A stretch of DNA of 64,000 nucleotides, from IMG/VR virus record IMGVR_UViG_3300028864_000016, positions 62,001 through 126,000 of that record, one strand, 5' to 3'. Of the stretch, positions 14,862-56,124 are shown one piece after another; the first letter of the stretch is position 1; each line of letters starts with the position of its first letter. The translations under genes were made by a program, and so were the position numbers. Under the pieces are notes generated by a model. It made no database searches. It had not been told where the DNA came from and saw nothing but the letters and a program-made list of their open reading frames with translations.

Positions 14862-16947
14862 ATGGCTGGTGAATATAAAAGTTCGATACGTCTTGGCGTT
14901 CAGTTAGAAAGTGAAAAAGATGTTAGTGGAAGATTACAAACTTTAATAAATACTTTACAAAAAGAAAAAATTAATTTAGATATAAATATTGCAAATTCAG
15001 ATGTAGCTAAACAATTAGAAACTTTAACTACTTTAGCAAATAATTTTAAAAATAGTTTGGGTAGTAATGTTTCATTAGGTAACGTGAATGAGATTATTAA
15101 TCAAGTTACCTCTGCAATGGTTAGTATGAATGACCAAGTATTAAAGACATCAAGAGTTGATATAGGTGATGGAATAACCAAACAATTAAAACAAACTGCT
15201 GAAGGTATTGGTGTAGTTAAAAGAGAATTACAATTATTAGATAAAGATGATAATAACACTTCTAAAATAAAACCTACAACTACAACAGATTATAATAAAA
15301 TAAGACAATCAATAGAAGATATAACAAAAGCACAAAAGCAATTAAATGCCTTAGAATCTAATGGATTTTCTGATATTAATAAGATTGCTTACTTAAAAAC
15401 TATGCTAAGTAATCCAAATAGTATAGGTTCAGATAATGAATTAAAAGGTTATTTAAATCAAGTTAAAGAATTGTTAGCAACTGAATCAAAAGTTATTGAA
15501 TATTCAAATAAATTAAATTCTCTGAAGTCTAATATGACTAATTTAACCGATGAGAAATATTCAAATGTTTTAAATACACAATCATTTGAACAAATAATTA
15601 ATGAGATAAATAATGCTCAAAATGGATTGAAAAACTTCGATGGTATAAATTTAAACGGCTTAAAACAACAATTTGATGAGTTGAGTGGAACTGTTTCTAA
15701 GTTTAGCACTGAAACTATAAGTTCTCAAAAAGCAGAACAAGATAATATAAAACAAAGAGAAAAATTAGAATCAGATAGGATATCTCAAATTCAGAAAGAA
15801 ATAGATTTAAGCAATAAATTAGTTGAAAATGAACAAAAGAGACAAGTAAAAGATGATTCAGCTAATTTAAAGCAATTAGAACAAGAACAGACTCTGTTAC
15901 AAAAACAAGCAGAAGCATACCAACATATAGACGCATTAAAATCAAACGGAATAGTAAATGAATCAGATATATCTAAACTTGAACAAATGGTTAAGAATTC
16001 TAAATCACTTCAAGATGTACGTAATGCAATTAATTCTATTATGAATACATCAATGATGAAAGAATCGTCTATTGTTACTATGTCTAAACAATTAGATGAT
16101 GCACAAATTAAATTGGATAAAATGAAGCAGAGTTTCGGAAATAAGTTGCCACAAGGCTTCGTAGAATCTACACAATCTGAAATTAATAAATTAAAAGAAG
16201 ATTTAACTAAAGTAGATAGTATGGGATTCAATGGTCTTAAAAATAGCTTGAATCAAGTTAATACTAATATGAAAGTAACCACTAACGAAACTCAACAATT
16301 AGTTAATTCTTTGAAAGAAACTAACAATGGTTCATTCTTTAGTGGAATCTCTAATTTTTTAGGTAAAGTTGGTATTTTTTATGGTGTTCAACAGGTAGTT
16401 CAAGAGATTAGTCAGCAGTTTAAAGATGCTAGTGAATATACTCAATCTTTAGATAAAAATGTGACAAATATTGAAATGATCACCTCGAAGAGTAAGGAAG
16501 AAGTTATTGGATTAACTAATCAATTTAAGGAATTAGGTGCTCAATTACATATAACTAATCAAGAAATGTTAGCAGGGTCAGAAGAACTTTTAAGGGCAGG
16601 TTTTGACAATAACACTACCAATAAAATGCTGGAAGCAAGTTCGATGGCTAGTAAGATTTCAGGTCAAACTACACAGGCAACAACAGAACAATTAATTGCA
16701 ATTAAGAATTCTTTCAATATGACTGGCGACCAAATGCAACATGTAATTGATGTTATTTCTAAATTAGATAATTCTAGTGCTACAAGTTTCGCTGAAATTT
16801 CTTCAGCAATTATGAGAACTAGTTTTAGTGCCCAACAAGCCGGAACAAGCTTTGATACGCTTTCAAGCTATGTAACTACAGTAAGTGAGAAGACTCGTAG
16901 ATCGGCAGAGACTATTGGAGAAGCATTTAAGAGTATTTATAGCAGAT
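14862..16947 (+). CDS. Tape measure protein, exon 1
   Basis: Long coiled coil, then TP901-type TMP core (LGAQLHITNQEMLAGSEELLRAG...TIGEAFKSIYSR); ends at a U typical of a group I 5-prime splice site. Confidence 0.85.
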
Positions 16948-17260
16948 TAATGATAAAAATAGTCTGCCTATACAGTAATGTATAGATAAAAACTAGGTGA
17001 ACCTGTAAATATAGGGTGTGCTATTAAATATAGTGCTAACGATGAAAGTCTAAGTTATTTAATAAAATAAATAATATGATAATATCGTGCCAAGTCTAAG
17101 TAATTAGAAAGGTGTAACGACTAAATTGGATTAATAATCCTAAGAGGTTTGAGGTGAAATTCCTTATTCCGTAGTGCCTAGCCCTCATGTGAGGTGAAGA
17201 GATAGTCTACTCCCACTTTTTAATAAGTGTTAAAGTATAGTGAAAACTAGGGTAAAAAGG
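16948..17260 (+). mobile_element. Group I self-splicing intron (313 nt, no ORF) in the tape measure gene
   Basis: P1: exon GCAGAU pairs with intron GUCUGC with terminal U-G; P2 ctatacagtaatgtatag; R element aacgacta; S element aagagatagtct; terminal G17260; splicing restores the frame SRYYNIKLGNIDEDG. Confidence 0.85.
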
Positions 17261-20200
17261 ATTATAACATAAAGTTAGGGAATATTGATGAGGATGGTAA
17301 AAACATAAATGACGTTGAGAAGGCAATGAATAACGTCGGTATTGCAATTCGTTCATCTAAGGGTGAGTTTAAGGATTTCGATGAGGTTTTAAATGAATTT
17401 GTGAATAAATATAAAAAAGGAACAATGAGTCAAGTTGATTTCTTAGCTGGAATAAACACGCTCGGTGGTTCTAGACAGAAAGAGACGATACTTAGTTTAG
17501 TCGAGAATTTCGACCAAGTTAAAAAACATCAAGATGATTTAACAAAAGCTACTGGTTCAGCTAAACAAATGTATGATGTTTATTCTCAATCTTTAGAAGC
17601 AAGAATATCTGATCTAAAAAGAGCATTTGAAGGATTGTATGAAAAAATAATGTCTTCGGATTCTTTAAAATGGCTAGTTTCAGAAGCTACTAATTTAATA
17701 ACTGCACTATCAAATCTAGATGGAAAATCAATAACATATATAGCAACAATTGGAACATTAAGTTTAGCATTGTCAAAATTAGTTAAAATTAACAAAGAAT
17801 TGATGCTATTAACTACAGAAGGTGGAATAGTAACTGGATTAACTAAATTTATTGGATTAGCTTCGGGAATGGTATCTTTAGAGAATGGGGCTACCGGTGT
17901 AGCAACTGCATTTGGTGTATTAGGAACTAGTATTAAAGGAGCTACTGCATCCGCTATGGGTTTTATAGCTACGCCAATTGGTTTAGCTATAACTTCAATC
18001 ACTGCTGTTATAGGAGTTGCAATTTATGGATTTGTTTCGTATCAACAACATCAAGCTGAGTTAACAGAACAATCTAAGTCTCTTAAATCAGCACTCGATG
18101 GCGTTAATAATTCTCTAAAGGGTGGAGACACTACTAAGGCACAAGAAGAAGCTAACAAAATGAAATCAGCACAAGAAAAGTTACAACAATATATTGAGTT
18201 AAGAAAGAAAGCACAAGATACTGATTCTAAATCATTAAATCCTACTGCAAGCGGTACAAACCAAACATCTGTAATAGAAGGGTTTAATCAAAAAATTAAA
18301 GAACAAATAAAAGTACTTACCGATGCTGGTTATACAGTTGAAGAAACTACTGGGAAAATAAAAGAATTTACTGACGCACAAGATAAAATATATAATACTA
18401 AAATAATAAATAGTATTAAAGAACAAACAAAATCACAATTAGAACATAGAGAAAATTTAGACAAAGTACAAGCTGAATATAATAATTATATTTCAACAGT
18501 TAAAAATTTGTATACAGAATATCAAAACTTATCTGCACAAGAAAATTTGTCGGCGGAACAAAAAACTAAACTACAGGGTACAGTAGAACAATTACAAGGT
18601 AAAATGAGTGGATTGAATGTCTCTATTGATGAAAATGGAAAAGTATTAATTTCAAATTCACCATTAATAGAAGCAAATATTCAGAAATTAATATCAGAAG
18701 GACTTACAGTTGATAATTTATCAGCTATTCGTATAACAGATTCTAAGGTAAATTCTCAATGGCAAGTAGGGAATTCTCAAGTTACATATAATGAAATAAC
18801 AAATAGAATTGAAATGTATAAAGCTGAGATAAAAGCGATACAATCTGTTATTCAAGCAAGAATGGCTGGGGCATCTGATTATTCAACGATGAGTATAGGT
18901 AAAGCACAAAGTCTAGAAGCTGGTTCACCAGAATTTGATAAACTAAAAGAAGAAACTGACCAATTACATGCGTATGAGAAAGCGAAAAAAGAAGCAGATG
19001 ATTTATATGCTGGGATAGGAAGTGTTGCATATTCTGCTCCTAGTGGAGGTGGTGTACAAACACCATCTAATGGAGATTATATGCCTTCTGGTGGGGATTC
19101 TAGCGAGAAAAAAAAGGCAGAAAAAGAACTTGAAGATTCAGAAAAGAAAATGTTATCTAATATCACAGATGCTTATAAACAAGCAAAAGATACTATATCG
19201 AATAATATTGAAGAAATAGATGCAAAGATAACTGGATTAGGTGATATAGATGATTCTAATTTTACTCAAAAAGTTTCACTTGTAAATGATAAAATAGGTG
19301 AACAAAAGCAAATAGTTGAAAAAGCACAAGAACAGTTAGACTCTTTAAAAAATACAACGGTAACAACGGCAGATGCACAAAAGGAACTTGAATCTGCAAC
19401 TTTATCTGCATCGAAGGAATTACGACAAGAAAGTTTAGAAGTAGCAAAATTACAATCAGAAATTGAAAAAACTGATATTGATGAACTAAAGAAAATGTAT
19501 GAAGATCAACAAAAGATTGAAACAGAAACTTTAGAAGCTAATCAAAAAGCACAAACAGATAAAATAGAATCTATTAAGAAAGCACAAGAAGATGCACATA
19601 ATGAGATAATGGATGACTATGAGGATGAATTAGATGCTTTAGATAAAAAATCTAAGAAATTAGATGAAGATAATGACAAGATAGATAGAGCTAATGAATT
19701 AGAAAAAGAGAAAAATGATTTAACAGAAAAACAAAAAGAGTTAAATAATGTTAAAAGTCAATTAACTAATCAAGTATATCAAAAGCAAGCAGATGGAACA
19801 TGGCAATTTGAGTATGTTGCAGATACTCAAAAGATTGCAGAAAAACAAAAAGAAGTTACAGAAGCACAAAAAACTCTTGATGATACAAATAGAAAAAATT
19901 CACTAGATGATGCTAAAAAAGAAATAGAAGATAAAAAAAGTGTTATTGAAGCTGATAAAAAAGCAGAAGATGAAGCATATACAAAGAAGAAAGCATATTT
20001 AGATGAGTATTCCTCTTATTTGAAAGAATCACAAGAGAGAGACACGAAACGTCTCGAGAATCATTATTCAGATATTGAAAAAATGGCAAAAGATACATTA
20101 AAGAAATTAGAAGAAGAGCATAACAATGATTGGAATGCTATTTCAGATTCAATTTCAGCTACACTAACTAGAACTAAAAAAGCATTAGAAGACTTAACTA

Positions 20201-21180
20201 CATTAAGAGCTAATTTTACAACTTCGGAAGCAAATGATGCTATTAATAGTGGGGATGTATCAGGATATTTAACAAAAAATAAAGATAAAATGAATTTAAA
20301 AGCAAGTGTAGATGAAAGTGATATAGATTCTCATTTAAATTCTATTAGTGACAAAGCAGATAAGGCTAACAATTCAGTTACTATATTGAATAAAACTTAT
20401 GACGAATTATTATCAAAGAAAAGCATTAATATAACCGAAGCTGATATTAATAATAAGAAAGTTCAAGTTCAAAAGCAAGTAGATATAGATAATGAAGGTT
20501 TAACAACTACTTTGAATAATTTAAAAGCTATTAATCTAGCAATTGAAACAGAAATAGACTCTCATTATTCAAAGGTAATTGACAAGCAAACTCAAGCACA
20601 ACAAAATGAGATGACTAGCTTACAAAACTTTGCAAAAGAATATACTATTTATTATAATAAATTCCTAGAATTAGTACAAACAGTTAATGACTTTAGATTT
20701 AATAATATTGTAGTGAATGTACAAGCATCTGTAGACAATGTATTACAAGGATTAGAAGTTATAGCAAAGGCTTATGAAAAATATGCTAAGGCATATAATA
20801 AAATGCACCCAGACGATACTATTTCTTCTAGTATTGATATATCAGATGTACAAAGTGCGAATACATCCTATAAAAAATCCGTAAGTGATTATCAAGCTAA
20901 TGTATTGTCATCATATTCTGCCGAAGCTTTTGAAAAATATGCAAGTCAAATTGGAAGTGGAATAGGAGATAGTTTATTGAGTAAGTTAAATAATTATAGT
21001 AGTTCTACTAGTAATATTAATAACACAAATAACGCTTCCACAACTAATAATAGTAATAAATCTACAACATCTAATACAACTAATGTAAATATAAATCAAC
21101 TTGATGTAAATACAAAGGACGCACAAAATTTATTAAATCAATTGTTAACAATAGTTAAAAATAAAACAAATTTGAGTTAG
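17261..21180 (+). CDS. Tape measure protein, exon 2 (spliced product 2001 aa)
   Basis: Frame is open upstream of ATG 17326 back to 17261; hydrophobic membrane segments, then long coiled coil; 2086+3920=6006 nt. Confidence 0.85.
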
Positions 21181-48114: not shown

Positions 48115-48382
48115 TTGTACCCCACCTTTTAAGGGAATTATACCATAATTTTAATGAGGATACAATAAGGACTTATATGCTTATTTGCGAAACGTCAATT
48201 TAGAAAACAAGGATGTTATAAGGATTAACATGAGGATATATTTTTAAAATGAGGTGAATAGGAGGGTGTAGTGGGATATATTATGAGGATAATTTGCTAT
48301 TAAATATTATTACTTTGAGTTTGTACGAAATTGTACAGGCTCTTTTATTATGACAAAAATAGAAATTAGAAAGGAGAAATAT

Positions 48383-48952
48383 ATGGAAGAAAAACAAGTA
48401 TTAAAGTTGACATTGCCTTTACCAAGTTCAATTAATCATATTTATGGTAGAAATAAGTTTGGATCAACTTATTTAAAAAAAGAAGGAAAAGATTATAAAA
48501 GTATAAATGGAGAATACATAAAGCAAGAAGTCATTAAACAAGGTTGGGAAAAGTTATTAGAATTTGAATATTGTTATCTTGATGAAGTTGTATATATGAA
48601 TAAAAAAGGAAGAGATTCTGATAACTTAAAAAAATTAACACAAGATACAATTACAGAATGTGAAGTAGTTTGGTTCGATGATACTTATTGTATGCCTAGA
48701 ACTAATAGGATATACATAGATAAGAACAATCCTAGAATTGAAATTACTTTAACTCCTACTAATACTGTAGGAATATTTGATAACAAGGCTGACTTTGAAT
48801 GTTTCGAAACTCAATGCAAAATATGTAGTAGTTATAAAGAAGGAAGATGCTCTGTATTCATAGAAAGTAAGGAAAATAAAATAAATGAACATGTTGAGTT
48901 AGTTTATAACAAATGGAATTGTAATAAATTTAGAGTTAGCAAAAAGAAATAA
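48383..48952 (+). CDS. rusA: RusA-family Holliday junction resolvase
   Basis: LPLPSSINHIY N-terminus; RDSDNLKKLTQD...FDD catalytic aspartate pattern; NPRIEITL. Confidence 0.75.
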   Translation: MEEKQVLKLTLPLPSSINHIYGRNKFGSTYLKKEGKDYKSINGEYIKQEVIKQGWEKLLEFEYCYLDEVVYMNKKGRDSDNLKKLTQDTITECEVVWFDDTYCMPRTNRIYIDKNNPRIEITLTPTNTVGIFDNKADFECFETQCKICSSYKEGRCSVFIESKENKINEHVELVYNKWNCNKFRVSKKK

Positions 48953-48964
48953 ATTAAATGGAGA

Positions 48965-49159
48965 GTGGAATTGATGGACTATAAAAATCAATTATATGTA
49001 TGTAAAACTTTGAGAATGATGAACTTTTTATGTAAGAAATATGATTGTATTAAACTTGCAGATGATAAGGATAATACTAAGTTTAAAGTATTTTTGTTTA
49101 AAGATAGCAATGAACTTAGAGAATATTTAAAAGAATATGATAATGAAATAAATAAGTAG
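48965..49159 (+). CDS. Small DUF5659-like protein
   Basis: YVCKTLRMMNFL...DKDNTKFKVFLFKDSNELREYL; precedes an endonuclease, as at 31611. Confidence 0.5.
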   Translation: MELMDYKNQLYVCKTLRMMNFLCKKYDCIKLADDKDNTKFKVFLFKDSNELREYLKEYDNEINK

Positions 49160-49244
49160 ATTAGGCATTTCTAAGAGAATTAGAGTGCCTTTTATTATGT
49201 CTAAAAATAAATGAATTATAAATAAGAAAGAAGGAATTTATATT

Positions 49245-50897
49245 ATGGGAAAGAAAAAAAGAACACATGAACAATTTGTAGAAGAAGTATTAAATATTGT
49301 AGGTCATGAAAAGTATGAATTTTTAACTGAGTATCAAGGGTGTGATAAGAAAATAACAATTAAATGTAAAGAAGACGCATATAGTTGGAGTATACAAGCA
49401 AATGGATTTTTAAATAATGGTTGTCATTGCCCTAAATGTAATAATAAAGTAATGAATAAAGATACTGATTATTTTAAAACTCAATTAAAAGAATTATATG
49501 AAGATGAATACATTTGCTTAGGTGAATATACTGGAGCTAAGAATAAGGTTCTGATAAAACATAATATTGAAAATTGTGGTAATGAATTTATGACAACTCC
49601 TGACAGTATAGTAAATAAAAAGAATGGCTGTCCAATTTGTAATCACAGAAAAGGTGCAGATAAATTATTTATAAGTCATGAAGAGTTTTGTGATAGAACT
49701 TCTAAACTGTTTAATAATGAGTTTGAATTATTATCACTATATAAAGGTGGTAAAGAAAATATTACTGTAAAACATATCCCTTGCGGTAGAGTATATGATA
49801 GACAAGCAGGAGATATTTTACAAGGAAAAGGTTGTAAATTTTGTGGATTTGGAGCTACAAAAGATACTCAGTGGTTTAAAGAAAAGGTATATGAAATGTA
49901 TCAAGAAGAATATACTGTTCTAGGTGAATACATAAGTACAGACACAACGATATTAATGAGACATAACAAATGTGGAAAAATGTATTCAATTAGACCAATA
50001 GATTTTATACGAGGAACTAGATGTAAATGTGAGTCAACATCTAAAGGAGAAAAAATAATTGAAATATTTTTAAGGTTTAATAGGATAGAATTTAAACAAC
50101 AATATACGTATGAAGATTGTAAAAATAAAGCAAGATTGCCTTTTGATTGTGCCGTAAAAGATAATAATGGACAAGTTATATTTCTGATTGAATTTGATGG
50201 GATTCAACATTATGAACCTATATATGGAGAAGAACAATTTGCAGATACAAAGTATAATGACGCAACAAAGAACTCTTATTGTGAGGATAATAATATTCCA
50301 CTAATAAGAATACCATTTTGGGATATGGACAAGATAAATAATATTTTAATAGATTATTTTAAAATTATAAATATTGATACAAATATGCCTACGGAAGGTT
50401 TAAATATTTGGGAAGAAGGTAATCAATTTAAATTGATTAAACTTTTAAAAGAATTACCTAATGGAATATATCCTAAAAGCTATGTAATAGAACAGTTGAA
50501 TTCTACAACAGTAATAAGTAGTTTAGCTAATATATTAAGGATAGATTGTATAAAAGAGGTTTGTAATAAATTAAATATACAATATAATAATAAAACTATT
50601 ACAATATTAAATAATTATACAAATTATGATAAATACAATAACTTAATTGAAACAATTAAAACATATAGAATTACAAAATCAATAAATATGTTTGCAGATT
50701 TATATACTAATATGAGTAAAATATTGGATAAATGTTATAAAAAAGATATATTCTGTAGTATGAATTGTTTTCATGGATTAGATAAACAATCGTCTGAATA
50801 TAAATTTATAGAAAATTTTATGGAAGAAAATAATTTATATTTTGAACACAATTATGTTTGTAAAAAACAAATTAAAAATAGAAAGGACTTGATTTAA
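49245..50897 (+). CDS. Free-standing endonuclease-like protein (tandem Zn-ribbon repeats plus PD-(D/E)xK/Vsr-like core)
   Basis: Repeated EYxG...HxxCG...CPxC units; RLPFDCAV...LIEFDGIQHY...LIRIPFW core. Confidence 0.75.
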   Translation: MGKKKRTHEQFVEEVLNIVGHEKYEFLTEYQGCDKKITIKCKEDAYSWSIQANGFLNNGCHCPKCNNKVMNKDTDYFKTQLKELYEDEYICLGEYTGAKNKVLIKHNIENCGNEFMTTPDSIVNKKNGCPICNHRKGADKLFISHEEFCDRTSKLFNNEFELLSLYKGGKENITVKHIPCGRVYDRQAGDILQGKGCKFCGFGATKDTQWFKEKVYEMYQEEYTVLGEYISTDTTILMRHNKCGKMYSIRPIDFIRGTRCKCESTSKGEKIIEIFLRFNRIEFKQQYTYEDCKNKARLPFDCAVKDNNGQVIFLIEFDGIQHYEPIYGEEQFADTKYNDATKNSYCEDNNIPLIRIPFWDMDKINNILIDYFKIINIDTNMPTEGLNIWEEGNQFKLIKLLKELPNGIYPKSYVIEQLNSTTVISSLANILRIDCIKEVCNKLNIQYNNKTITILNNYTNYDKYNNLIETIKTYRITKSINMFADLYTNMSKILDKCYKKDIFCSMNCFHGLDKQSSEYKFIENFMEENNLYFEHNYVCKKQIKNRKDLI

Positions 50898-50898
50898 T

Positions 50899-51813
50899 AT
50901 GGGCAAAAGAGTACATATACATTATTTCACAAAGGAGAAAAACGATTTAGTAAATAAAGATAACAGAAAAAAATATGACAAATATCTAAAGAGTAATATT
51001 ATAAAGAACAAGGATGTTAAGGAAACAACTTATCTCGTTTACGAGAATTATTTCAACCAATTTTTGGTTTATCTTGCTGAGGAATGGGAAAACCTTGATT
51101 TATATTCAGAAGATTTTAGTGATAATGCTATTGATATTATGGAGGGGTTCATGTCTTTTTGTCAAGATACACTTCAAAATAATAAGAAAATAATTAATAC
51201 TAAAATATCAGCAGTATCTAGTTTCTTTTTATGGAGCGTTAAAAGAAAGGAAATTAAATTTCATCCCTTTCAAGGTCAATTAGATCGCATGAAGGGGGCG
51301 AGAGAAGAACATATTATAGGTAATTATTTTTTAAATGATGAACAAATATTAGCTATTCAAACTGGACTAATAGAAAATCCAGACAATAAATTTGATTTAT
51401 TAGATATAGTTCTATGGAACGTTATGTTGGATTCAGCTAATAGAATTGGTGCAATTGATAGATTAACACTATCTAGCTATGATGTAGACGAATGTTGTTT
51501 TAGAGATATACGTGAAAAAGAAGGCTATATTATTGACGTATCTGTAAATGAAAATACAGTGGAATTAATTCATACGTGGTTAGAATATAGAAAAGAACAT
51601 ATGGATAATTTAGAAATAGACGCTTTATTTATTAGTAGATACGGTGGAGTTTATAAAAAAATGTCTAAAGGAACTTTACAAGCAAGAATTAAAAAGATGG
51701 GTACTATTATAGGGATTGATGACTTTAGGTCTCACTGCGTCAGAAAAACCGCATCTAATAGTATGTTATCTAAGGGTATAGATCCTTCTTTAGTTAGTAA
51801 ATATTTAAACCAT
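50899..51813 (+). CDS. Tyrosine recombinase/integrase, exon 1
   Basis: DSANRIGAI (catalytic R), FRSHCVRKT (HxxR), YLNH (H); lacks the catalytic Tyr. Confidence 0.85.
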
Positions 51814-52102
51814 AAACTACAACTTGTGGCTTAATGGAGTAATCCATTTCGAATAACTCGCTTAATACGGGGAAGGCTAAATCTTTAAAGAGACATGCTA
51901 ACCTACCGTGCTAAATTATTCTATATAAATAAATTATTAGAATATAAAAGCCTAACGACTATTCCTTCGGGAAGTACCTATAAGTATAGGGAAATGGTGA
52001 GTCTCCTACTAGGAGAGTGATATAGTCTAATCTTATGGGAAATCATAAGCAGTTCATAAGAGAACGGTATAGGAATTAACGAACCTATATGAATATAAAA
52101 TG
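51814..52102 (+). mobile_element. Group I self-splicing intron (289 nt, no ORF) in the tyrosine recombinase gene
   Basis: P1: exon UUAAACCAU pairs with GUGGCUUAA with terminal U-G; P10: exon-2 AAG pairs with CUU; R aacgacta; S gatatagtcta; terminal G52102; splicing gives YLNH-KDVSTTLAFY. Confidence 0.85.
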
Positions 52103-52288
52103 AAGGATGTTTCAACCACATTAGCATTTTATCAAAAGCCTAAATCTTCAGTTGAGATAAGAGATGCTATAAAGAAACAAATTAAATTACTATCTAAAAA
52201 GAAAGAAGAAGGTATGGAAGATGAAATTGAAATACCAGTAGTAGTTGAATCACAGTCTAATTCATTTGGGAATAAAAGAAACTTCTAA
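52103..52288 (+). CDS. Tyrosine recombinase, exon 2 (carries the catalytic Tyr; spliced product 366 aa)
   Basis: KDVSTTLAFYQK matches the H-x-x-x-x-T-T-x-x-Y box II end of tyrosine recombinases. Confidence 0.85.
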   Translation, partial: KDVSTTLAFYQKPKSSVEIRDAIKKQIKLLSKKKEEGMEDEIEIPVVVESQSNSFGNKRNF

Positions 52289-53990: not shown

Positions 53991-54689
53991 TTATAAAGAC
54001 TTTAATCTCTCATAATCATTTTCTATTCCACAGAAAATTAATTCTTTAGAATAAGGTAATGTTGTACACCACTTACAGAATACTTCTTGCCATTCATATT
54101 TTAATCTATGATGTTTTCTTTGTTGTATAATATTACTTATAGTAGCATAATTTGTATTAACAGTTCTTTTATTCTGATAAGATTCTGGTAGTATTCTTTT
54201 AGCTGAAGATAATACTTCGTCTTTTTGTCCTTGAGTATCACATTCTTCAAAAAATATATCTCTTAAAATATTTAAATCTTCTATTATATTTGACAAATGT
54301 CCATTTTCAAATGCATCAGCAGAATGACATTCAAACATATCTAATGTAATCTCAGTATTTTTATCAAATAGCTTATGCATTGTTGAAGTTGAATTTGCAG
54401 ATGTTCCTATTTTATAAGTATCAAATTCTGACCACCAATACCTAGGTGCTGTTATATCACACCAAACTTGTATTTGTCTAAAGAATTTGCAATGTTCTGT
54501 ACCAGCTTTAATTAATGTTTGTGCTAGTTTTAAATCTTTGTCACCCATAATAAATTCCTCTATATTAATGTTTGGGCTATTTAATAGTAACCCTTTGTAA
54601 CTATCACTTAAATTCCAACTATTTTTTGGATTTCTCATTCCTCTAAAACTTGCTTTAAATCCATAAACCTCTGTATTTTCTATTTTCAT
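53991..54689 (-). CDS. ThyX-like (FAD-dependent thymidylate synthase-like) phage protein
   Basis: LIKAGTEHCKFFRQIQVWCDITAPRYWWSEFDTYK...STSTMH...AKRILPESY...NYATISNIIQQRKHH parallels ThyX architecture. Confidence 0.55.
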   Translation of the reverse strand: MKIENTEVYGFKASFRGMRNPKNSWNLSDSYKGLLLNSPNINIEEFIMGDKDLKLAQTLIKAGTEHCKFFRQIQVWCDITAPRYWWSEFDTYKIGTSANSTSTMHKLFDKNTEITLDMFECHSADAFENGHLSNIIEDLNILRDIFFEECDTQGQKDEVLSSAKRILPESYQNKRTVNTNYATISNIIQQRKHHRLKYEWQEVFCKWCTTLPYSKELIFCGIENDYERLKSL

Positions 54690-55103: not shown

Positions 55104-55886
55104 CTAAACATTAGTATATTTATCGTCACTTCCTTTTATTAAATTACATAAATTATCATTATTCATGTATAGTTTATAATCTTCATTAAGCCATTTATGT
55201 ATTTTATTTAATCTTACTTCATTATAGAAATCTTGTCTTATATACCAATCTTCTAATTTATCCGTACACTTACTACTATTACAAGTTTTACAACTAGGTA
55301 CACAATTGGATAAATTGTTAGCTCCATTATGGTCTACGTGTTCCCTATGAAAATCAGTATGTTTTAATTTCCCTGCAAATGTATTAAAATGTTCTTCAAT
55401 TGGCAACCCACAATAGGCACAACAATTATTGAAATATTCCTTACAAGACAACCATTCTTCTTTTGTAATTGTATGTTGTTTATTCATTTCTCGATATTCT
55501 CTATATTCTTTCAACTTGTCAGGATTATTTCTTTGCCAGTTCTTTAAGTTGCCTTTTGCGCGACTTCTTCTTGACACTTCTCTAAAATATTCTCTTTTAT
55601 CAGGGGTATATTTTCTTTTATGTTCATTTCTTTTGTATTCTAAGTAATGTTCTCTATTATCAATTTGTTGATATTTACTACTATTTCTTACATTACATTT
55701 TTTACAATAAGGGAATAAACCATCTGAACTTCCTTTGTTCTTATAAAAATGTTCAGTATCATACAATATCCATTCATCTTCATCTGGAAAATATTCATTA
55801 TGCTTACTACAATATTTATAAATAACTCCATCTATTTCTTTATGATTCTGTTCATAATATATACGGTTTTTCTCTTCTTGATTCAT
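55104..55886 (-). CDS. HNH endonuclease
   Basis: CCAYCG...HREHVDHNGANNLSNCVPSCKTCNSSK. Confidence 0.85.
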   Translation of the reverse strand: MNQEEKNRIYYEQNHKEIDGVIYKYCSKHNEYFPDEDEWILYDTEHFYKNKGSSDGLFPYCKKCNVRNSSKYQQIDNREHYLEYKRNEHKRKYTPDKREYFREVSRRSRAKGNLKNWQRNNPDKLKEYREYREMNKQHTITKEEWLSCKEYFNNCCAYCGLPIEEHFNTFAGKLKHTDFHREHVDHNGANNLSNCVPSCKTCNSSKCTDKLEDWYIRQDFYNEVRLNKIHKWLNEDYKLYMNNDNLCNLIKGSDDKYTNV

Positions 55887-55935
55887 TTAATCACTCACTT
55901 TCTTTTATTATAAAAATTCCAATAATATTTAACTT

Positions 55936-56112
55936 TTATATTCTTTTAATTTGTTGATTATCTAATTTTGTTTCTAGTTCGTTTACCTTATTAATCAATT
56001 CATTGATTTTTTCAGTTTGTGCATTGCATACCTTGCAAGCAAGTATAATTGCTTCAGATTTATTAAACATACCTACAGAACCTATAATTTTTGTTTTTAA
56101 TTTTCCAATCAT
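55936..56112 (-). CDS. 58-aa hypothetical protein
   Basis: Translated by hand (MIGKLKTKIIGSVGMFNKSEAIILACKVCNAQTEKINELINKVNELETKLDNQQIKRI); AAGGAG RBS. Confidence 0.55.
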   Translation of the reverse strand: MIGKLKTKIIGSVGMFNKSEAIILACKVCNAQTEKINELINKVNELETKLDNQQIKRI

Positions 56113-56124
56113 ATCTAATGCTCC

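What the first reader, a model, noticed from the sequence alone, without database searches (positions are those of the whole stretch)
51814..52102. Group I intron inserted between the catalytic His and Tyr of a tyrosine recombinase
Seen: exon 1 ends ...YLNH (U at 51813), exon 2 begins KDVSTTLAFY; P1, P10, R/S elements and the terminal G are all recognisable. Unspliced mRNA yields a 311-aa protein with R, HxxR and H but no Tyr nucleophile. Inference: splicing gates recombination, and the unspliced product could bind sites as a dominant-negative, linking excision or resolution to conditions that affect ribozyme folding. Automated annotation would call this a pseudogene.
Basis: partly seen in the sequence, partly recalled or inferred. 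Interest (0 to 1): 0.8.

Follow-up and report, generated by a model that had tools for sequence, protein, structure and literature searches.

The report
Mobile group I intron splitting phage integrase
A 289-base self-splicing-type (group I) intron really does interrupt a phage tyrosine recombinase gene between its catalytic histidine and tyrosine, but the evidence says it is a wandering selfish element, also found in tail genes and missing from near-identical phages, not a purpose-built switch for recombination.

Summary
[quoted passage not shown] It sits between the His codon (CAT, 51811-51813) and the next codon of a tyrosine recombinase gene in a 218-kb peat phage. Intron-less alleles, up to about 99% identical in protein, align up to 51813-51815 and resume at 52103. 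Splicing CAU|AAG would restore ...YLNHKDVSTTLAFY.... Six sequence variants keep the fold, with 98.9% of cells paired and 11 compensatory pairs. Exon 2 is under the same purifying selection as exon 1 (dN/dS about 0.15).

The "splicing gates recombination" reading has no support:
- The intron comes and goes among near-identical alleles (at least 4-6 gains or losses).
- Exon co-conversion-like tracts accompany it.
- The same intron lineage (85-97% identical) sits at two sites in tape-measure genes of related phages. These sites share only CCAU|, the complement of the guide sequence.
- A free-standing homing-endonuclease gene (49245-50897) lies directly upstream, in a slot that holds different endonuclease genes in relatives.

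Splicing was not observed directly, because no metatranscriptome contig crosses the junction. Verdict: a new member of a known kind, in a host gene absent from the intron lists I checked. Its mobility footprint is useful.

The parts
49245..50897 (+). Free-standing homing-endonuclease-like gene (550 aa). Its stop codon lies one base before the recombinase start codon.
   Evidence: PHROG phrog_559 'HNH endonuclease' E 1.6e-75, phrog_9084 'homing endonuclease' 3e-24, phrog_7140 'intron encoded nuclease' 1e-15. Weak Pfam hits to DUF2726 and DUF4379. ESM Atlas neighbours are DUF723/DUF4379/NUMOD1 viral proteins. The phrog_559 family is reported as an intron-encoded endonuclease in terminase introns of Bastillevirinae (PMC11878797). 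The gene is absent from intron-less L005, L042, L054 and from intron-bearing L053; it is present in L006 and L049.
50899..51813 (+). Exon 1 of the tyrosine recombinase (305 codons). It carries R182, K207, H279, R282 and H305.
   Evidence: PF00589 E 4e-17. These residues are nearly invariant across 16 aligned homologues. The alignment to E. coli XerD (1a0p) places H305 on the XerD box II His.
51811..51813 (+). His305 codon (CAT). U51813 is the last exon base and forms the U.G pair of P1.
   Evidence: Sequence, P1 pairing check, invariant in 6 intron variants.
51814..52102 (+). ORF-less group I intron, 289 nt, with subgroup IA features (P7.1, P7.2, P9.1, P9.2).
   Evidence: RF00028 61.8 bits against a gathering score of 50. 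Exact insertion relative to intron-less alleles. Helices P1-P9.2 are 98.9% paired with 11 compensatory pairs in 6 variants, against 0-1 in the slid controls. The nested MFE fold recovers P1, P2, P4-P6, P7.1 and P9.2, z = -2.4.
51824..51829 (+). Internal guide sequence, 3' strand of P1 (UUGUGG). GUGG pairs with exon CCAU; the neighbouring CUU (51823-51825) can pair with exon 2 AAG as P10.
   Evidence: All three insertion sites of this intron lineage end in CCAU|.
51832..51834 (+). In-frame UAA that ends translation of the unspliced message after 6 intron codons, giving the 311-aa product.
   Evidence: ORF list. Other variants stop within 11 intron codons but in another frame.
51957..51961 (+). 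P7 5' strand (GACUA, part of element R). It pairs with 52023-52027.
   Evidence: Rfam alignment. 5 of 5 pairs are invariant in 6 variants.
52023..52027 (+). P7 3' strand (UAGUC, part of element S).
52102..52102 (+). Terminal G of the intron (omega G).
   Evidence: All 6 variants end ...AAAUG directly before the exon. Breakpoint against intron-less alleles.
52103..52288 (+). Exon 2 (61 codons plus stop): KDVSTTLAFYQKPKSS...
   Evidence: Collinear with intron-less P0001, P0131 and others. dN/dS is 0.15 for window against L006 over the first 31 codons, against 0.16 in exon 1.
52130..52132 (+). Codon of the presumed nucleophile Tyr (Y315 of the spliced protein), 10 residues after H305.
   Evidence: Y is conserved at this column in all full-length homologues aligned. 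In the XerD alignment the XerD Tyr falls one residue earlier, on F314, so the assignment rests on family conservation.

Best explanation
Window 51814-52102 is a mobile, ORF-less group I intron of the phage IA type. It has invaded the most conserved C-terminal motif (N-H-K) of a tyrosine recombinase gene in a roughly 218-kb peat phage.

Proposed mechanism:
1. The gene is transcribed through the intron.
2. Ribosomes that run past His305 stop at UAA 51832-51834, just 3' of P1.
3. The ribozyme folds. Exogenous guanosine attacks after U51813, which is paired to G51826 in P1.
4. The freed exon 1 attacks after G52102. The joined message CAU|AAG encodes a 366-aa recombinase with Tyr315.

The intron is there because it is selfish, not because the recombinase needs it. 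Among recombinase alleles it spreads or is lost by DNA recombination that drags flanking exon sequence along. This may be helped by the free-standing endonuclease gene immediately upstream (49245-50897), if that enzyme cuts intron-less alleles at or near the insertion site (collaborative homing). It has also jumped between unrelated genes, to two tape-measure sites that share only CCAU|. That pattern is what guide-sequence-directed reverse splicing would produce.

Shown: the intron's identity and boundaries, fold conservation, selection on exon 2, presence/absence polymorphism, the copies in other genes, and the endonuclease neighbour. Inferred: actual splicing, the endonuclease's target, and the reverse-splicing route.
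For: - **Identity.** RF00028 at 61.8 bits, E 2.5e-15.
- **Boundaries and restored frame.** Exact 289-nt insertion relative to intron-less alleles.
- **P1 and P10.** P1 with the U.G pair, P10 and the terminal G all check out.
- **Fold under selection.** 76 pairs are 98.9% paired, with 11 compensatory pairs in P5a, P6a, P7.1, P7.2 and P9, against 0-1 in the slid controls. The intron is 90.5% identical between two lineages whose exons are 70-76% identical and whose synonymous divergence is about 1.
- **Exon 2 translated in frame.** dN/dS is 0.15 in exon 2 and 0.16 in exon 1.
- **Dispensable and mobile.** 14 intron-bearing and 14 intron-less alleles interleave on the tree, needing 6 changes, of which at least 4 are forced by strongly supported branches.
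- **Closest pair.** The window allele P0123 and the intron-less P0131 differ at 3 of 305 exon 1 residues.
- **Synonymous sites track the intron.** All 4 intron-bearing alleles read AAC CAT|; all 5 intron-less alleles read AAT CAY|.
- **Co-conversion-like tract.** Window-L054 identity falls from 89-97% to 76-84% in the 150 nt around the site, where intron-bearing alleles agree with each other.
- **Copies in another gene.** Tape-measure copies in L046 (96.5% identical, 67.2 bits) and L052 (85.5%, 62 bits) splice in frame.
- **Endonuclease neighbour.**. The phrog_559-type gene accompanies 3 of 4 intron-bearing lineages and 0 of 6 intron-less ones.
- **Transcription.** Metatranscriptome contigs 100% identical to exon 1 exist.
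- **Literature.** Phage introns target conserved catalytic codons; collaborative homing and reverse splicing are described in PMC3984707 and PMC2504315.
Against: - No RNA contig or read crosses either splice junction or shows the ligated exons, so splicing is inferred and not observed.
- L053 carries the intron without any endonuclease gene upstream. Intron-less L054, L055, L043 and L044 carry other endonuclease genes in the same slot. The endonuclease-intron link is therefore only a tendency, and the lineages are not independent.
- The higher conservation of the intron compared with the exons can be explained by structural constraint alone.
- Reverse splicing needs a reverse transcription step for which no gene was identified. 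Illegitimate DNA recombination could also move the intron.
- The Tyr lies 10 residues after the His, not the 9 seen in XerD.
Confidence: 0.85

Rival explanations
1. Regulatory switch. Splicing efficiency varies with conditions such as GTP level, Mg2+, translation load or temperature, and so sets the ratio of active recombinase to a Tyr-less 311-aa protein. That protein occupies recombination sites as a dominant negative, which times integration, excision or resolution.
For: The unspliced product keeps R, K, H-x-x-R and H but lacks Tyr and the last 61 residues. Group I splicing needs guanosine, and a 'molecular on-switch' idea has been floated for phage introns (PMC11878797). An allosteric group I ribozyme exists in C. 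difficile (PMC3984707). No splicing data exclude the idea.
Against: The intron is absent from near-identical alleles and from 109 of the 127 homologues that could be scored. The same intron sits in tape-measure genes, where this logic does not apply. The intron-encoded tail differs in frame between variants. No aptamer or riboswitch was found next to it. Any intron in a catalytic motif yields a truncated by-product, so the feature is not specific. The truncation also removes the C-terminal segment, so stability and site binding of the product are unknown.
Confidence: 0.07
2. Dead or decaying gene. The insertion has inactivated the recombinase, the ribozyme no longer splices, and the two ORF pieces are remnants.
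For: Gene callers report only a 311-aa truncated product (P0123 and others). No spliced RNA was seen.
Against: Exon 2 has stayed open and in frame in four intron-bearing lineages, with dN/dS 0.15, equal to exon 1. The ribozyme core is invariant and its peripheral hairpins change by compensatory pairs. The CM score is above the curated threshold in all copies tested.
Confidence: 0.04
3. Split enzyme without splicing. Exon 2 is translated on its own from the ATG at 52100-52102, and the 62-aa Tyr-bearing peptide complements the 311-aa fragment in trans.
For: An ATG lies in frame directly before exon 2, giving ORF 52100-52288 (62 aa). It is conserved in all integrase-site copies.
Against: The AAAUG end is also conserved in the tape-measure copies. 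In L046 that AUG is out of frame with exon 2 and runs into a stop after two codons, so it is a feature of the ribozyme's 3' end. No Shine-Dalgarno-like sequence precedes it. This idea would not explain why the ribozyme fold is conserved.
Confidence: 0.02

Closest known systems
ORF-less subgroup IA2 group I introns of phages of Gram-positive hosts (Staphylococcus phage Twort orf142 and nrdE introns; introns of Bacillus phages SPO1, AR9 and PBS1)
   Same: The size is similar (about 250-300 nt) and there is no internal ORF. P7.1/P7.2 and P9.1/P9.2 peripheral hairpins are present. The intron sits in a conserved protein-coding gene, and several introns occur in one genome. The 3' half (51954-52103) is 73-74% identical in DNA to introns of Twort-like, AR9/PBS1 and Lak phages. 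The RF00028 match is above threshold.
   Different: The host gene is a tyrosine recombinase. That gene is absent from the compiled list of split phage genes that I could read (supplement of PMC11878797; the file was cut when stored) and from two reviews or surveys. No close relative (>75% identity) exists in isolated phages. Subgroup assignment rests on helix inventory only.
Collaborative homing: an ORF-less intron plus a free-standing homing endonuclease that cuts the intron insertion site (cyanophage S-PM2 F-CphI with the psbA intron; T4 mobE with the nrdB intron)
   Same: An ORF-less intron sits in a conserved gene and a free-standing endonuclease gene lies immediately next to that gene. 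The endonuclease gene is variably present among relatives. Exon co-conversion-like tracts flank the intron (concept in PMC3984707, and PMC2790892).
   Different: The endonuclease's cleavage site is unknown. One intron-bearing lineage (L053) has no endonuclease gene, and intron-less alleles sit next to other endonuclease types. The nuclease belongs to the phrog_559 family (Vsr-like/DUF2726 plus treble-clef fingers), not the Endo VII-like or HNH types of the two known cases.
[quoted passage not shown]
   Same: Closely related introns occupy different sites whose only common feature is 4-6 nt complementary to the guide sequence. Here that is CCAU| at the recombinase site and at two tape-measure sites. 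The concept is in PMC3984707, PMC1299323 and PMC2504315.
   Different: The targets here are protein-coding genes of phages, not rRNA. No reverse transcriptase was identified and the route is untested. Within the recombinase gene, the flanking exon mosaic points to DNA-based transfer.
c-di-GMP-dependent allosteric group I ribozyme of Clostridioides difficile
   Same: It is a group I ribozyme whose splicing outcome controls whether a protein is made.
   Different: That ribozyme is fused to a riboswitch aptamer in a 5' UTR. No aptamer or riboswitch family is detected here, and the intron lies inside the coding region.

Membership tests
Group I intron (Rfam RF00028) | Covariance-model score at or above the curated gathering score | tested here: met
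   61.8 bits against 50, E 2.5e-15; same match from the own-genome search. Related copies score 67.2 and 62 bits. The match is missed when 64 kb is searched at once.
Group I intron (Rfam RF00028) | Conserved core: P3-P8 with the P3/P7 pseudoknot and the R/S elements | tested here: met
   The hand-built structure has P3 (7 bp), P4 (6 bp), P5, P6, P7 (5 bp) and P8. All are 100% paired and invariant in 6 variants, and peripheral helices covary. R and S align to the consensus.
Group I intron (Rfam RF00028) | 5' splice site after a U that forms a U.G pair with the internal guide sequence in P1; 3' terminal G; P10 possible | tested here: met
   U51813.G51826 lies within a 6-bp P1; the terminal G is G52102; P10 is AAG/CUU.
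Group I intron (Rfam RF00028) | Removal restores an uninterrupted host gene (intron-less alleles exist) | tested here: met
   L005, L054, L055 and P0131 read ...YLNHKDVSTTL... with breakpoints at 51813-51815 and 52103.
Group I intron (Rfam RF00028) | Self-splicing (guanosine-dependent) shown on RNA | tested here: inconclusive
   Three metatranscriptome runs hold contigs 100% identical to exon 1 (50695-51158, 51372-51648, 51670-51810), but none reaches the junction. In vitro splicing is not testable with these tools.
Subgroup IA2 (phage-type) group I introns | P7.1 and P7.2 hairpins between P7 and the 3' strand of P3; P9.1/P9.2 extensions | tested here: met
   P7.1 is 51962-51973 and P7.2 is 51977-51990, both with compensatory changes. 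P9.1 is 52052-52065 and P9.2 is 52068-52089. Formal subgroup classification, for example by the P7 logo, was not done.
Mobile intron with an intron-encoded homing endonuclease | Endonuclease ORF inside the intron | tested here: not met
   The intron is 289 nt. The only internal ORF is 41 aa, overlaps the catalytic core, and was not searched against any family.
Collaborative homing system | Free-standing homing endonuclease gene adjacent to the intron-bearing gene | tested here: met
   ORF 49245-50897, phrog_559 E 1.6e-75. A homologue lies upstream in intron-bearing L006 and L049.
Collaborative homing system | The endonuclease cleaves intron-less alleles at or near the intron insertion site, and the intron protects its own genome | not testable with these tools
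   The only evidence is an association: the phrog_559-type gene is present in 3 of 4 intron-bearing lineages and 0 of 6 intron-less ones. The lineages are not independent.
Tyrosine recombinase (Pfam PF00589) | Domain match and the R-K-H-R-H/W-Y catalytic set | tested here: met
   PF00589 gives E 4e-17 for exon 1 alone (profile 13-156) and 4e-21 for the intron-less P0001 (profile 13-167). R182, K207, H279, R282 and H305 are nearly invariant, and Y315 is conserved in exon 2. In the XerD alignment the Tyr is offset by one residue.
Allosteric or riboswitch-coupled group I ribozyme | Ligand-binding aptamer joined to the ribozyme | tested here: not met
   No riboswitch family was found in the window or within 51700-52250, even at E up to 10.
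IStron | IS200/IS605-type transposase genes fused to the 3' part of a group I intron | tested here: not met
   The intron is 289 nt with no coding capacity.

The most novel reading that the evidence does not exclude
Splicing of this intron is conditional and acts as a switch on the phage's recombinase. Under poor-splicing conditions the phage makes a Tyr-less 311-aa site-binding protein that blocks recombination. This would make the intron a domesticated regulator, not a passenger.

A second, more likely novelty is that this ORF-less intron lineage moves between unrelated phage protein genes by guide-sequence-directed reverse splicing. I put that at about 0.35 probability, with about 0.55 interest if shown.
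Probability: 0.07. Interest if true: 0.7.

Novelty: new member of a known kind. Interest (0 to 1): 0.4.

Why it matters
For annotation, this recombinase and at least 14 related database entries of 307-315 aa are called as truncated "XerC" proteins. They are really intron-split genes whose active-site Tyr lies in a second exon.

For biology, the locus is a compact natural system for studying group I intron mobility in phages. One intron lineage shows four things together:
- presence/absence polymorphism among near-identical alleles;
- co-conversion-like exon tracts;
- a neighbouring slot that swaps homing-endonuclease genes;
- copies at three sites in two unrelated genes that share only the 4-nt guide-sequence complement.

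The published circumstantial case for reverse-splicing spread rests mostly on rDNA introns (PMC3984707). A protein-gene case in phages would make that long-open question testable. It does not, on present evidence, reveal a new way of regulating recombination.

Tried and rejected
- **Whole-window Rfam scans.** Gathering and E-value modes found nothing, and a four-locus scan missed known copies. This is a filter artefact, not absence; searches of 600 nt or less recover the matches.
- **Rfam's P1 register (U51818.G51828).** Rejected, because no G-terminated 3' site restores the frame from it.
- **Alternative in-frame 3' site after G52081.** It would add 7 residues. Rejected on the alignment to intron-less alleles.
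- **P0082/L045 (303 aa).** It looked like a second interrupted allele but is a frameshift, not an intron.
- **PDB sequence search of the 550-aa endonuclease.** No hit. Pfam matches are weak only.
- **Strict endonuclease-intron linkage.** Rejected by L053, which has the intron but no endonuclease gene.
- **Recent block transfer of endonuclease gene plus exon 1 plus intron between the window and L006 lineages.** Rejected: the endonuclease gene is 74.5% identical and exon 1 is 75.7%, against 90.5% for the intron.
- **Literature search for an intron in an integrase or recombinase gene.** Nothing found. This covers only the held library.
- **Other introns of the same genome.** They are not close relatives of this one; they share only a 19-nt core match.
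Full report
**1. What is at the coordinates**

The window is bases 62001-126000 of a 218,173-bp linear virus record from a peat metagenome, estimated 88% complete.

- The ORF at 50899-51834 (+) encodes 311 aa ending ...SKYLNHKLQLVA*.
- Its first 305 residues match Pfam PF00589 (Phage_integrase, E 4e-17). The match covers only profile positions 13-156 of 172, so it stops before the Tyr region.
- From 52103 the same strand reads KDVSTTLAFYQKPKSS... to a stop at 52286-52288.
- A local Rfam scan of 51700-52250 gives RF00028 (Intron_gpI) at 51809-52049 with 61.8 bits (gathering 50) and E 2.5e-15. The R and S elements and P3-P9 align to the consensus.
- A search of the phage's own genome gives the same match plus three more group I hits.
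- Whole-window scans missed the intron. A 11.5-kb four-locus scan missed copies that score 62-67 bits when searched alone. This is a speed-filter effect.

**2. Boundaries**

A protein search with exon 1 found 630 homologues, nearly all 335-367 aa. The closest full-length ones read straight through...YLNHKDVSTTL(A/S)FYQKPKSS....

At the DNA level, the intron-less allele L005 aligns to the window up to 51815 and resumes at 52103. L054 and L055 break at the same places. The insertion is therefore 289 nt with a 2-nt (AA) ambiguity. Only 51814-52102 puts a U before the 5' splice site and a G at the 3' end.

- P1 is CCAU|AA (51810-51815) paired with UUGUGG (51824-51829), with the U51813.G51826 wobble pair.
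- P10 is AAG (52103-52105) paired with CUU (51823-51825).
- Rfam's automatic P1 register, five bases further on, cannot restore the frame and is rejected.

**3. Is the ribozyme maintained?**

Pattern scans of viral and metagenome contigs recovered six distinct variants of this intron, 85-100% identical. I drew a structure by hand with P1, P2, P3, P4, P5, P5a, P6, P6a, P7 (pseudoknot), P7.1, P7.2, P8, P9, P9.1 and P9.2.

- 98.9% of 448 cells form standard pairs.
- 11 pairs change on both sides, all in P5a, P6a, P7.1, P7.2 and P9.
- Sliding the partners by 1-3 columns gives 34-45% pairing and 0-1 such pairs.
- Core helices never vary.
- Between the window and the L006 lineage, the intron is 90.5% identical. 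Exon 1, exon 2 and the upstream gene are 75.7%, 70.0% and 74.5% identical, and synonymous divergence is about 1.

P7.1/P7.2 and P9.1/P9.2 are the peripheral elements of subgroup IA2 phage introns (established knowledge; not formally classified here). The 3' half is 73-74% identical to introns of Twort-like Staphylococcus phages, Bacillus phages AR9/PBS1 and Lak phages.

**4. Is it spliced?**

Direct evidence is lacking. Three wetland metatranscriptomes hold short contigs 100% identical to exon 1 (50695-51158, 51372-51648, 51670-51810), but none reaches a junction. The DNA control shows no intron-less form in the source sample.

Indirect evidence is good.
- In two intron-bearing lineages the first 31 codons of exon 2 have dN/dS 0.15, the same as exon 1 at 0.16, with 11 synonymous differences. 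Exon 2 is therefore read in frame.
- The ATG that ends the intron (52100-52102) is not a likely independent start. The same AAAUG end is kept in the tape-measure copies, and in L046 it is out of frame with exon 2. No Shine-Dalgarno-like sequence precedes it.

**5. The protein**

- R182, K207, H279, R282 and H305 are nearly invariant and lie in exon 1. A Tyr 10 residues after H305 is conserved in every full-length homologue and lies in exon 2, at codon 52130-52132.
- The alignment to E. coli XerD (1a0p, E 9e-9) puts H305 on the box II His and the XerD Tyr on F314, one residue before Y315. The Tyr assignment is thus by family conservation.
- The insertion site falls within N304-H305-K306, the most conserved C-terminal motif.
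- Relatives occur in large Bacillota phages (Lysinibacillus LC76P1, Brevibacillus Sundance, Clostridium c-st) and in Bacillus and Paenibacillus genomes.
- In related contigs the gene lies in a DNA-metabolism block, next to a RusA-like resolvase gene and near thymidylate synthase and ligase genes.
- Its biological role (integration or multimer resolution) is not established.

**6. The intron is dispensable and mobile**

- **Polymorphism.** Within the 90%-identity clusters around the window's protein there are full-length (365-367 aa) and truncated (307-315 aa) members. P0131, on a 108-kb contig, differs from the window's exon 1 at 3 of 305 residues and has no intron.
- **Tree.** On a tree of 28 exon 1 proteins (14 with and 14 without the intron), the trait needs 6 changes, of which at least 4 are forced by strongly supported branches. 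Rows shorter than 300 aa were left out.
- **Restricted range.** Outside this clade (below about 77% identity) every homologue that could be scored is uninterrupted.
- **Synonymous sites.** All four intron-bearing lineages read AAC CAT| at the site, and all five intron-less alleles examined read AAT CAY|. Synonymous sites that form P1 thus track the intron.
- **Mosaic identity.** Window against L054 is 89-97% identical over most of exon 1 but 76-84% in the roughly 150 nt around the junction. There the intron-bearing alleles agree with each other (window-L049 95%). L053 switches likewise from L055-like to window-like.

This is what exon co-conversion during DNA-based homing, or recombinational loss, would leave.

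**7. The same intron in another gene**

- In an 85-kb related phage (G001; L046, L017, L051), a copy 96.5% identical (RF00028 67.2 bits) interrupts the tape-measure gene (PF10145; phrog_4211) at ...GAA CUU GCC AU|G AAU AGA.... Splicing restores ...NDTELA-MNRIGIAIR..., which is collinear with the window's own tape-measure protein.
- In L052, a copy 85.5% identical (62 bits) sits about 27 codons upstream at ...GCC GAA ACC AU|A GGU GAA..., restoring ...SAETIGESFKTIY....
- The three sites share only CCAU|, the complement of the guide GUGG. P10 of 2-4 bp can form at each.
- The window's own tape-measure gene has ACUAU and GCAAU at those positions and no copy of this intron.
- Hairpin variants are shuffled among copies. 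The P5a and P7.1 variant is shared by L053 and L052. The P7.2 variants are shared by L049 with L052 and by L053 with L046. This indicates recombination between copies.

Reviews state that reverse splicing needs only 4-6 nt of pairing, and that the best circumstantial cases are rDNA introns at two sites (PMC3984707; PMC2504315). This lineage is a comparable case in phage protein genes. The route is inferred, not shown.

**8. The neighbour**

ORF 49245-50897 (550 aa) ends one base before the recombinase start.

- It matches phrog_559 (E 1.6e-75), phrog_9084 'homing endonuclease' and phrog_7140 'intron encoded nuclease'.
- phrog_559 proteins with a Vsr-like domain are intron-encoded in terminase introns of Bastillevirinae (PMC11878797).
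- The same slot holds a homologue in L006 and L049, a GIY-YIG/NUMOD endonuclease gene in L054, a phrog_4538/9084-type gene in L043 and L055, and a small GIY-YIG-like gene in L044. It holds nothing in L005, L053 and L042.

The phrog_559-type gene goes with the intron in 3 of 3 lineages that have it. One intron-bearing lineage (L053) lacks it. This fits collaborative homing, in which a free-standing endonuclease targets the insertion site and the intron confers immunity. The cleavage site is unknown, and the sample is small and not independent.

**9. Verdict on the interpretation**

The anatomy is right. The regulatory reading is not supported, for four reasons: the enzyme exists without the intron in sister phages; the intron also lives in tail genes; its truncated by-product has no conserved tail; and no sensor element is attached. 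A truncated exon 1 product is an automatic consequence of any intron in a coding region. Conditional splicing cannot be excluded without RNA data.

**10. Novelty**

Group I introns in conserved phage genes, at codons for catalytic residues, are well known. The two surveys and the compiled list of split phage genes that I could read name polymerases, ribonucleotide reductases, thymidylate synthase, terminases, lysins, and tail, capsid and tape-measure genes. They name no integrase or tyrosine recombinase. The supplement was cut when stored, and only the held library was searched. I rate this as a new member of a known kind. Its main value is as a natural system for studying intron mobility and as an annotation correction.

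Noticed in passing
window ~16993-17230 (+), between ORFs 14862-16985 and 17326-21180: A different group I intron (RF00028 38.3 bits, below the gathering score) splits the tape-measure gene (PF10145; phrog_4211) after ...KSIYSR. This is a third tape-measure site, lying between the two sites occupied by the integrase-type intron in related phages.
   Followed up: partly
own genome G000:C1:55038-55278 and 55813-56116 (outside the window; loci L002, L003): Two more group I introns (61.3 and 38.4 bits) split a gene whose first piece weakly matches terminase large subunit (phrog_5989, E 7e-8). The phage therefore carries at least four group I introns.
   Followed up: partly
window 48965-50897, and the same position in L006, L043, L044, L054, L055: The position directly upstream of the recombinase start codon is a swap site for free-standing homing-endonuclease genes of at least three families (phrog_559 type, GIY-YIG/NUMOD, phrog_4538/9084 type). 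It is empty in L005, L053 and L042. Flanks are about 90% identical between the window and L054 while the endonuclease gene itself is replaced.
   Followed up: partly
window 1-64000 (method note): cmscan over the whole window, in both gathering and E-value modes, reports no group I intron. Searches of 600 nt or less give 61.8 bits. AT-rich phage introns can be lost by the speed filters, so other introns in the window may remain undetected.
   Followed up: partly
L045:312-1341 (protein P0082): A 303-aa homologue that looked intron-split is instead frameshifted near the same C-terminal region. It is followed by a 503-aa HNH_repeat protein gene.
   Followed up: partly
window 48350-48952 (+) and 53991-54689 (-): A RusA-like Holliday junction resolvase gene (phrog_34, E 5e-25) lies upstream of the endonuclease gene. 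A conserved 232-aa gene (phrog_6721, E 9.5e-57, function unknown) lies downstream on the other strand, at the position where the related contig L044 has a thymidylate synthase ThyX (Thy1) gene.
   Followed up: no
intron copies in alignment A3 (window, L049, L053, L006, L046, L052): Peripheral hairpins (P5a, P6a, P7.1, P7.2) occur as discrete alternative versions, including a UUCG to GUAA tetraloop swap. These are reshuffled among copies in different genes and phages, which suggests frequent recombination between intron copies.
   Followed up: partly
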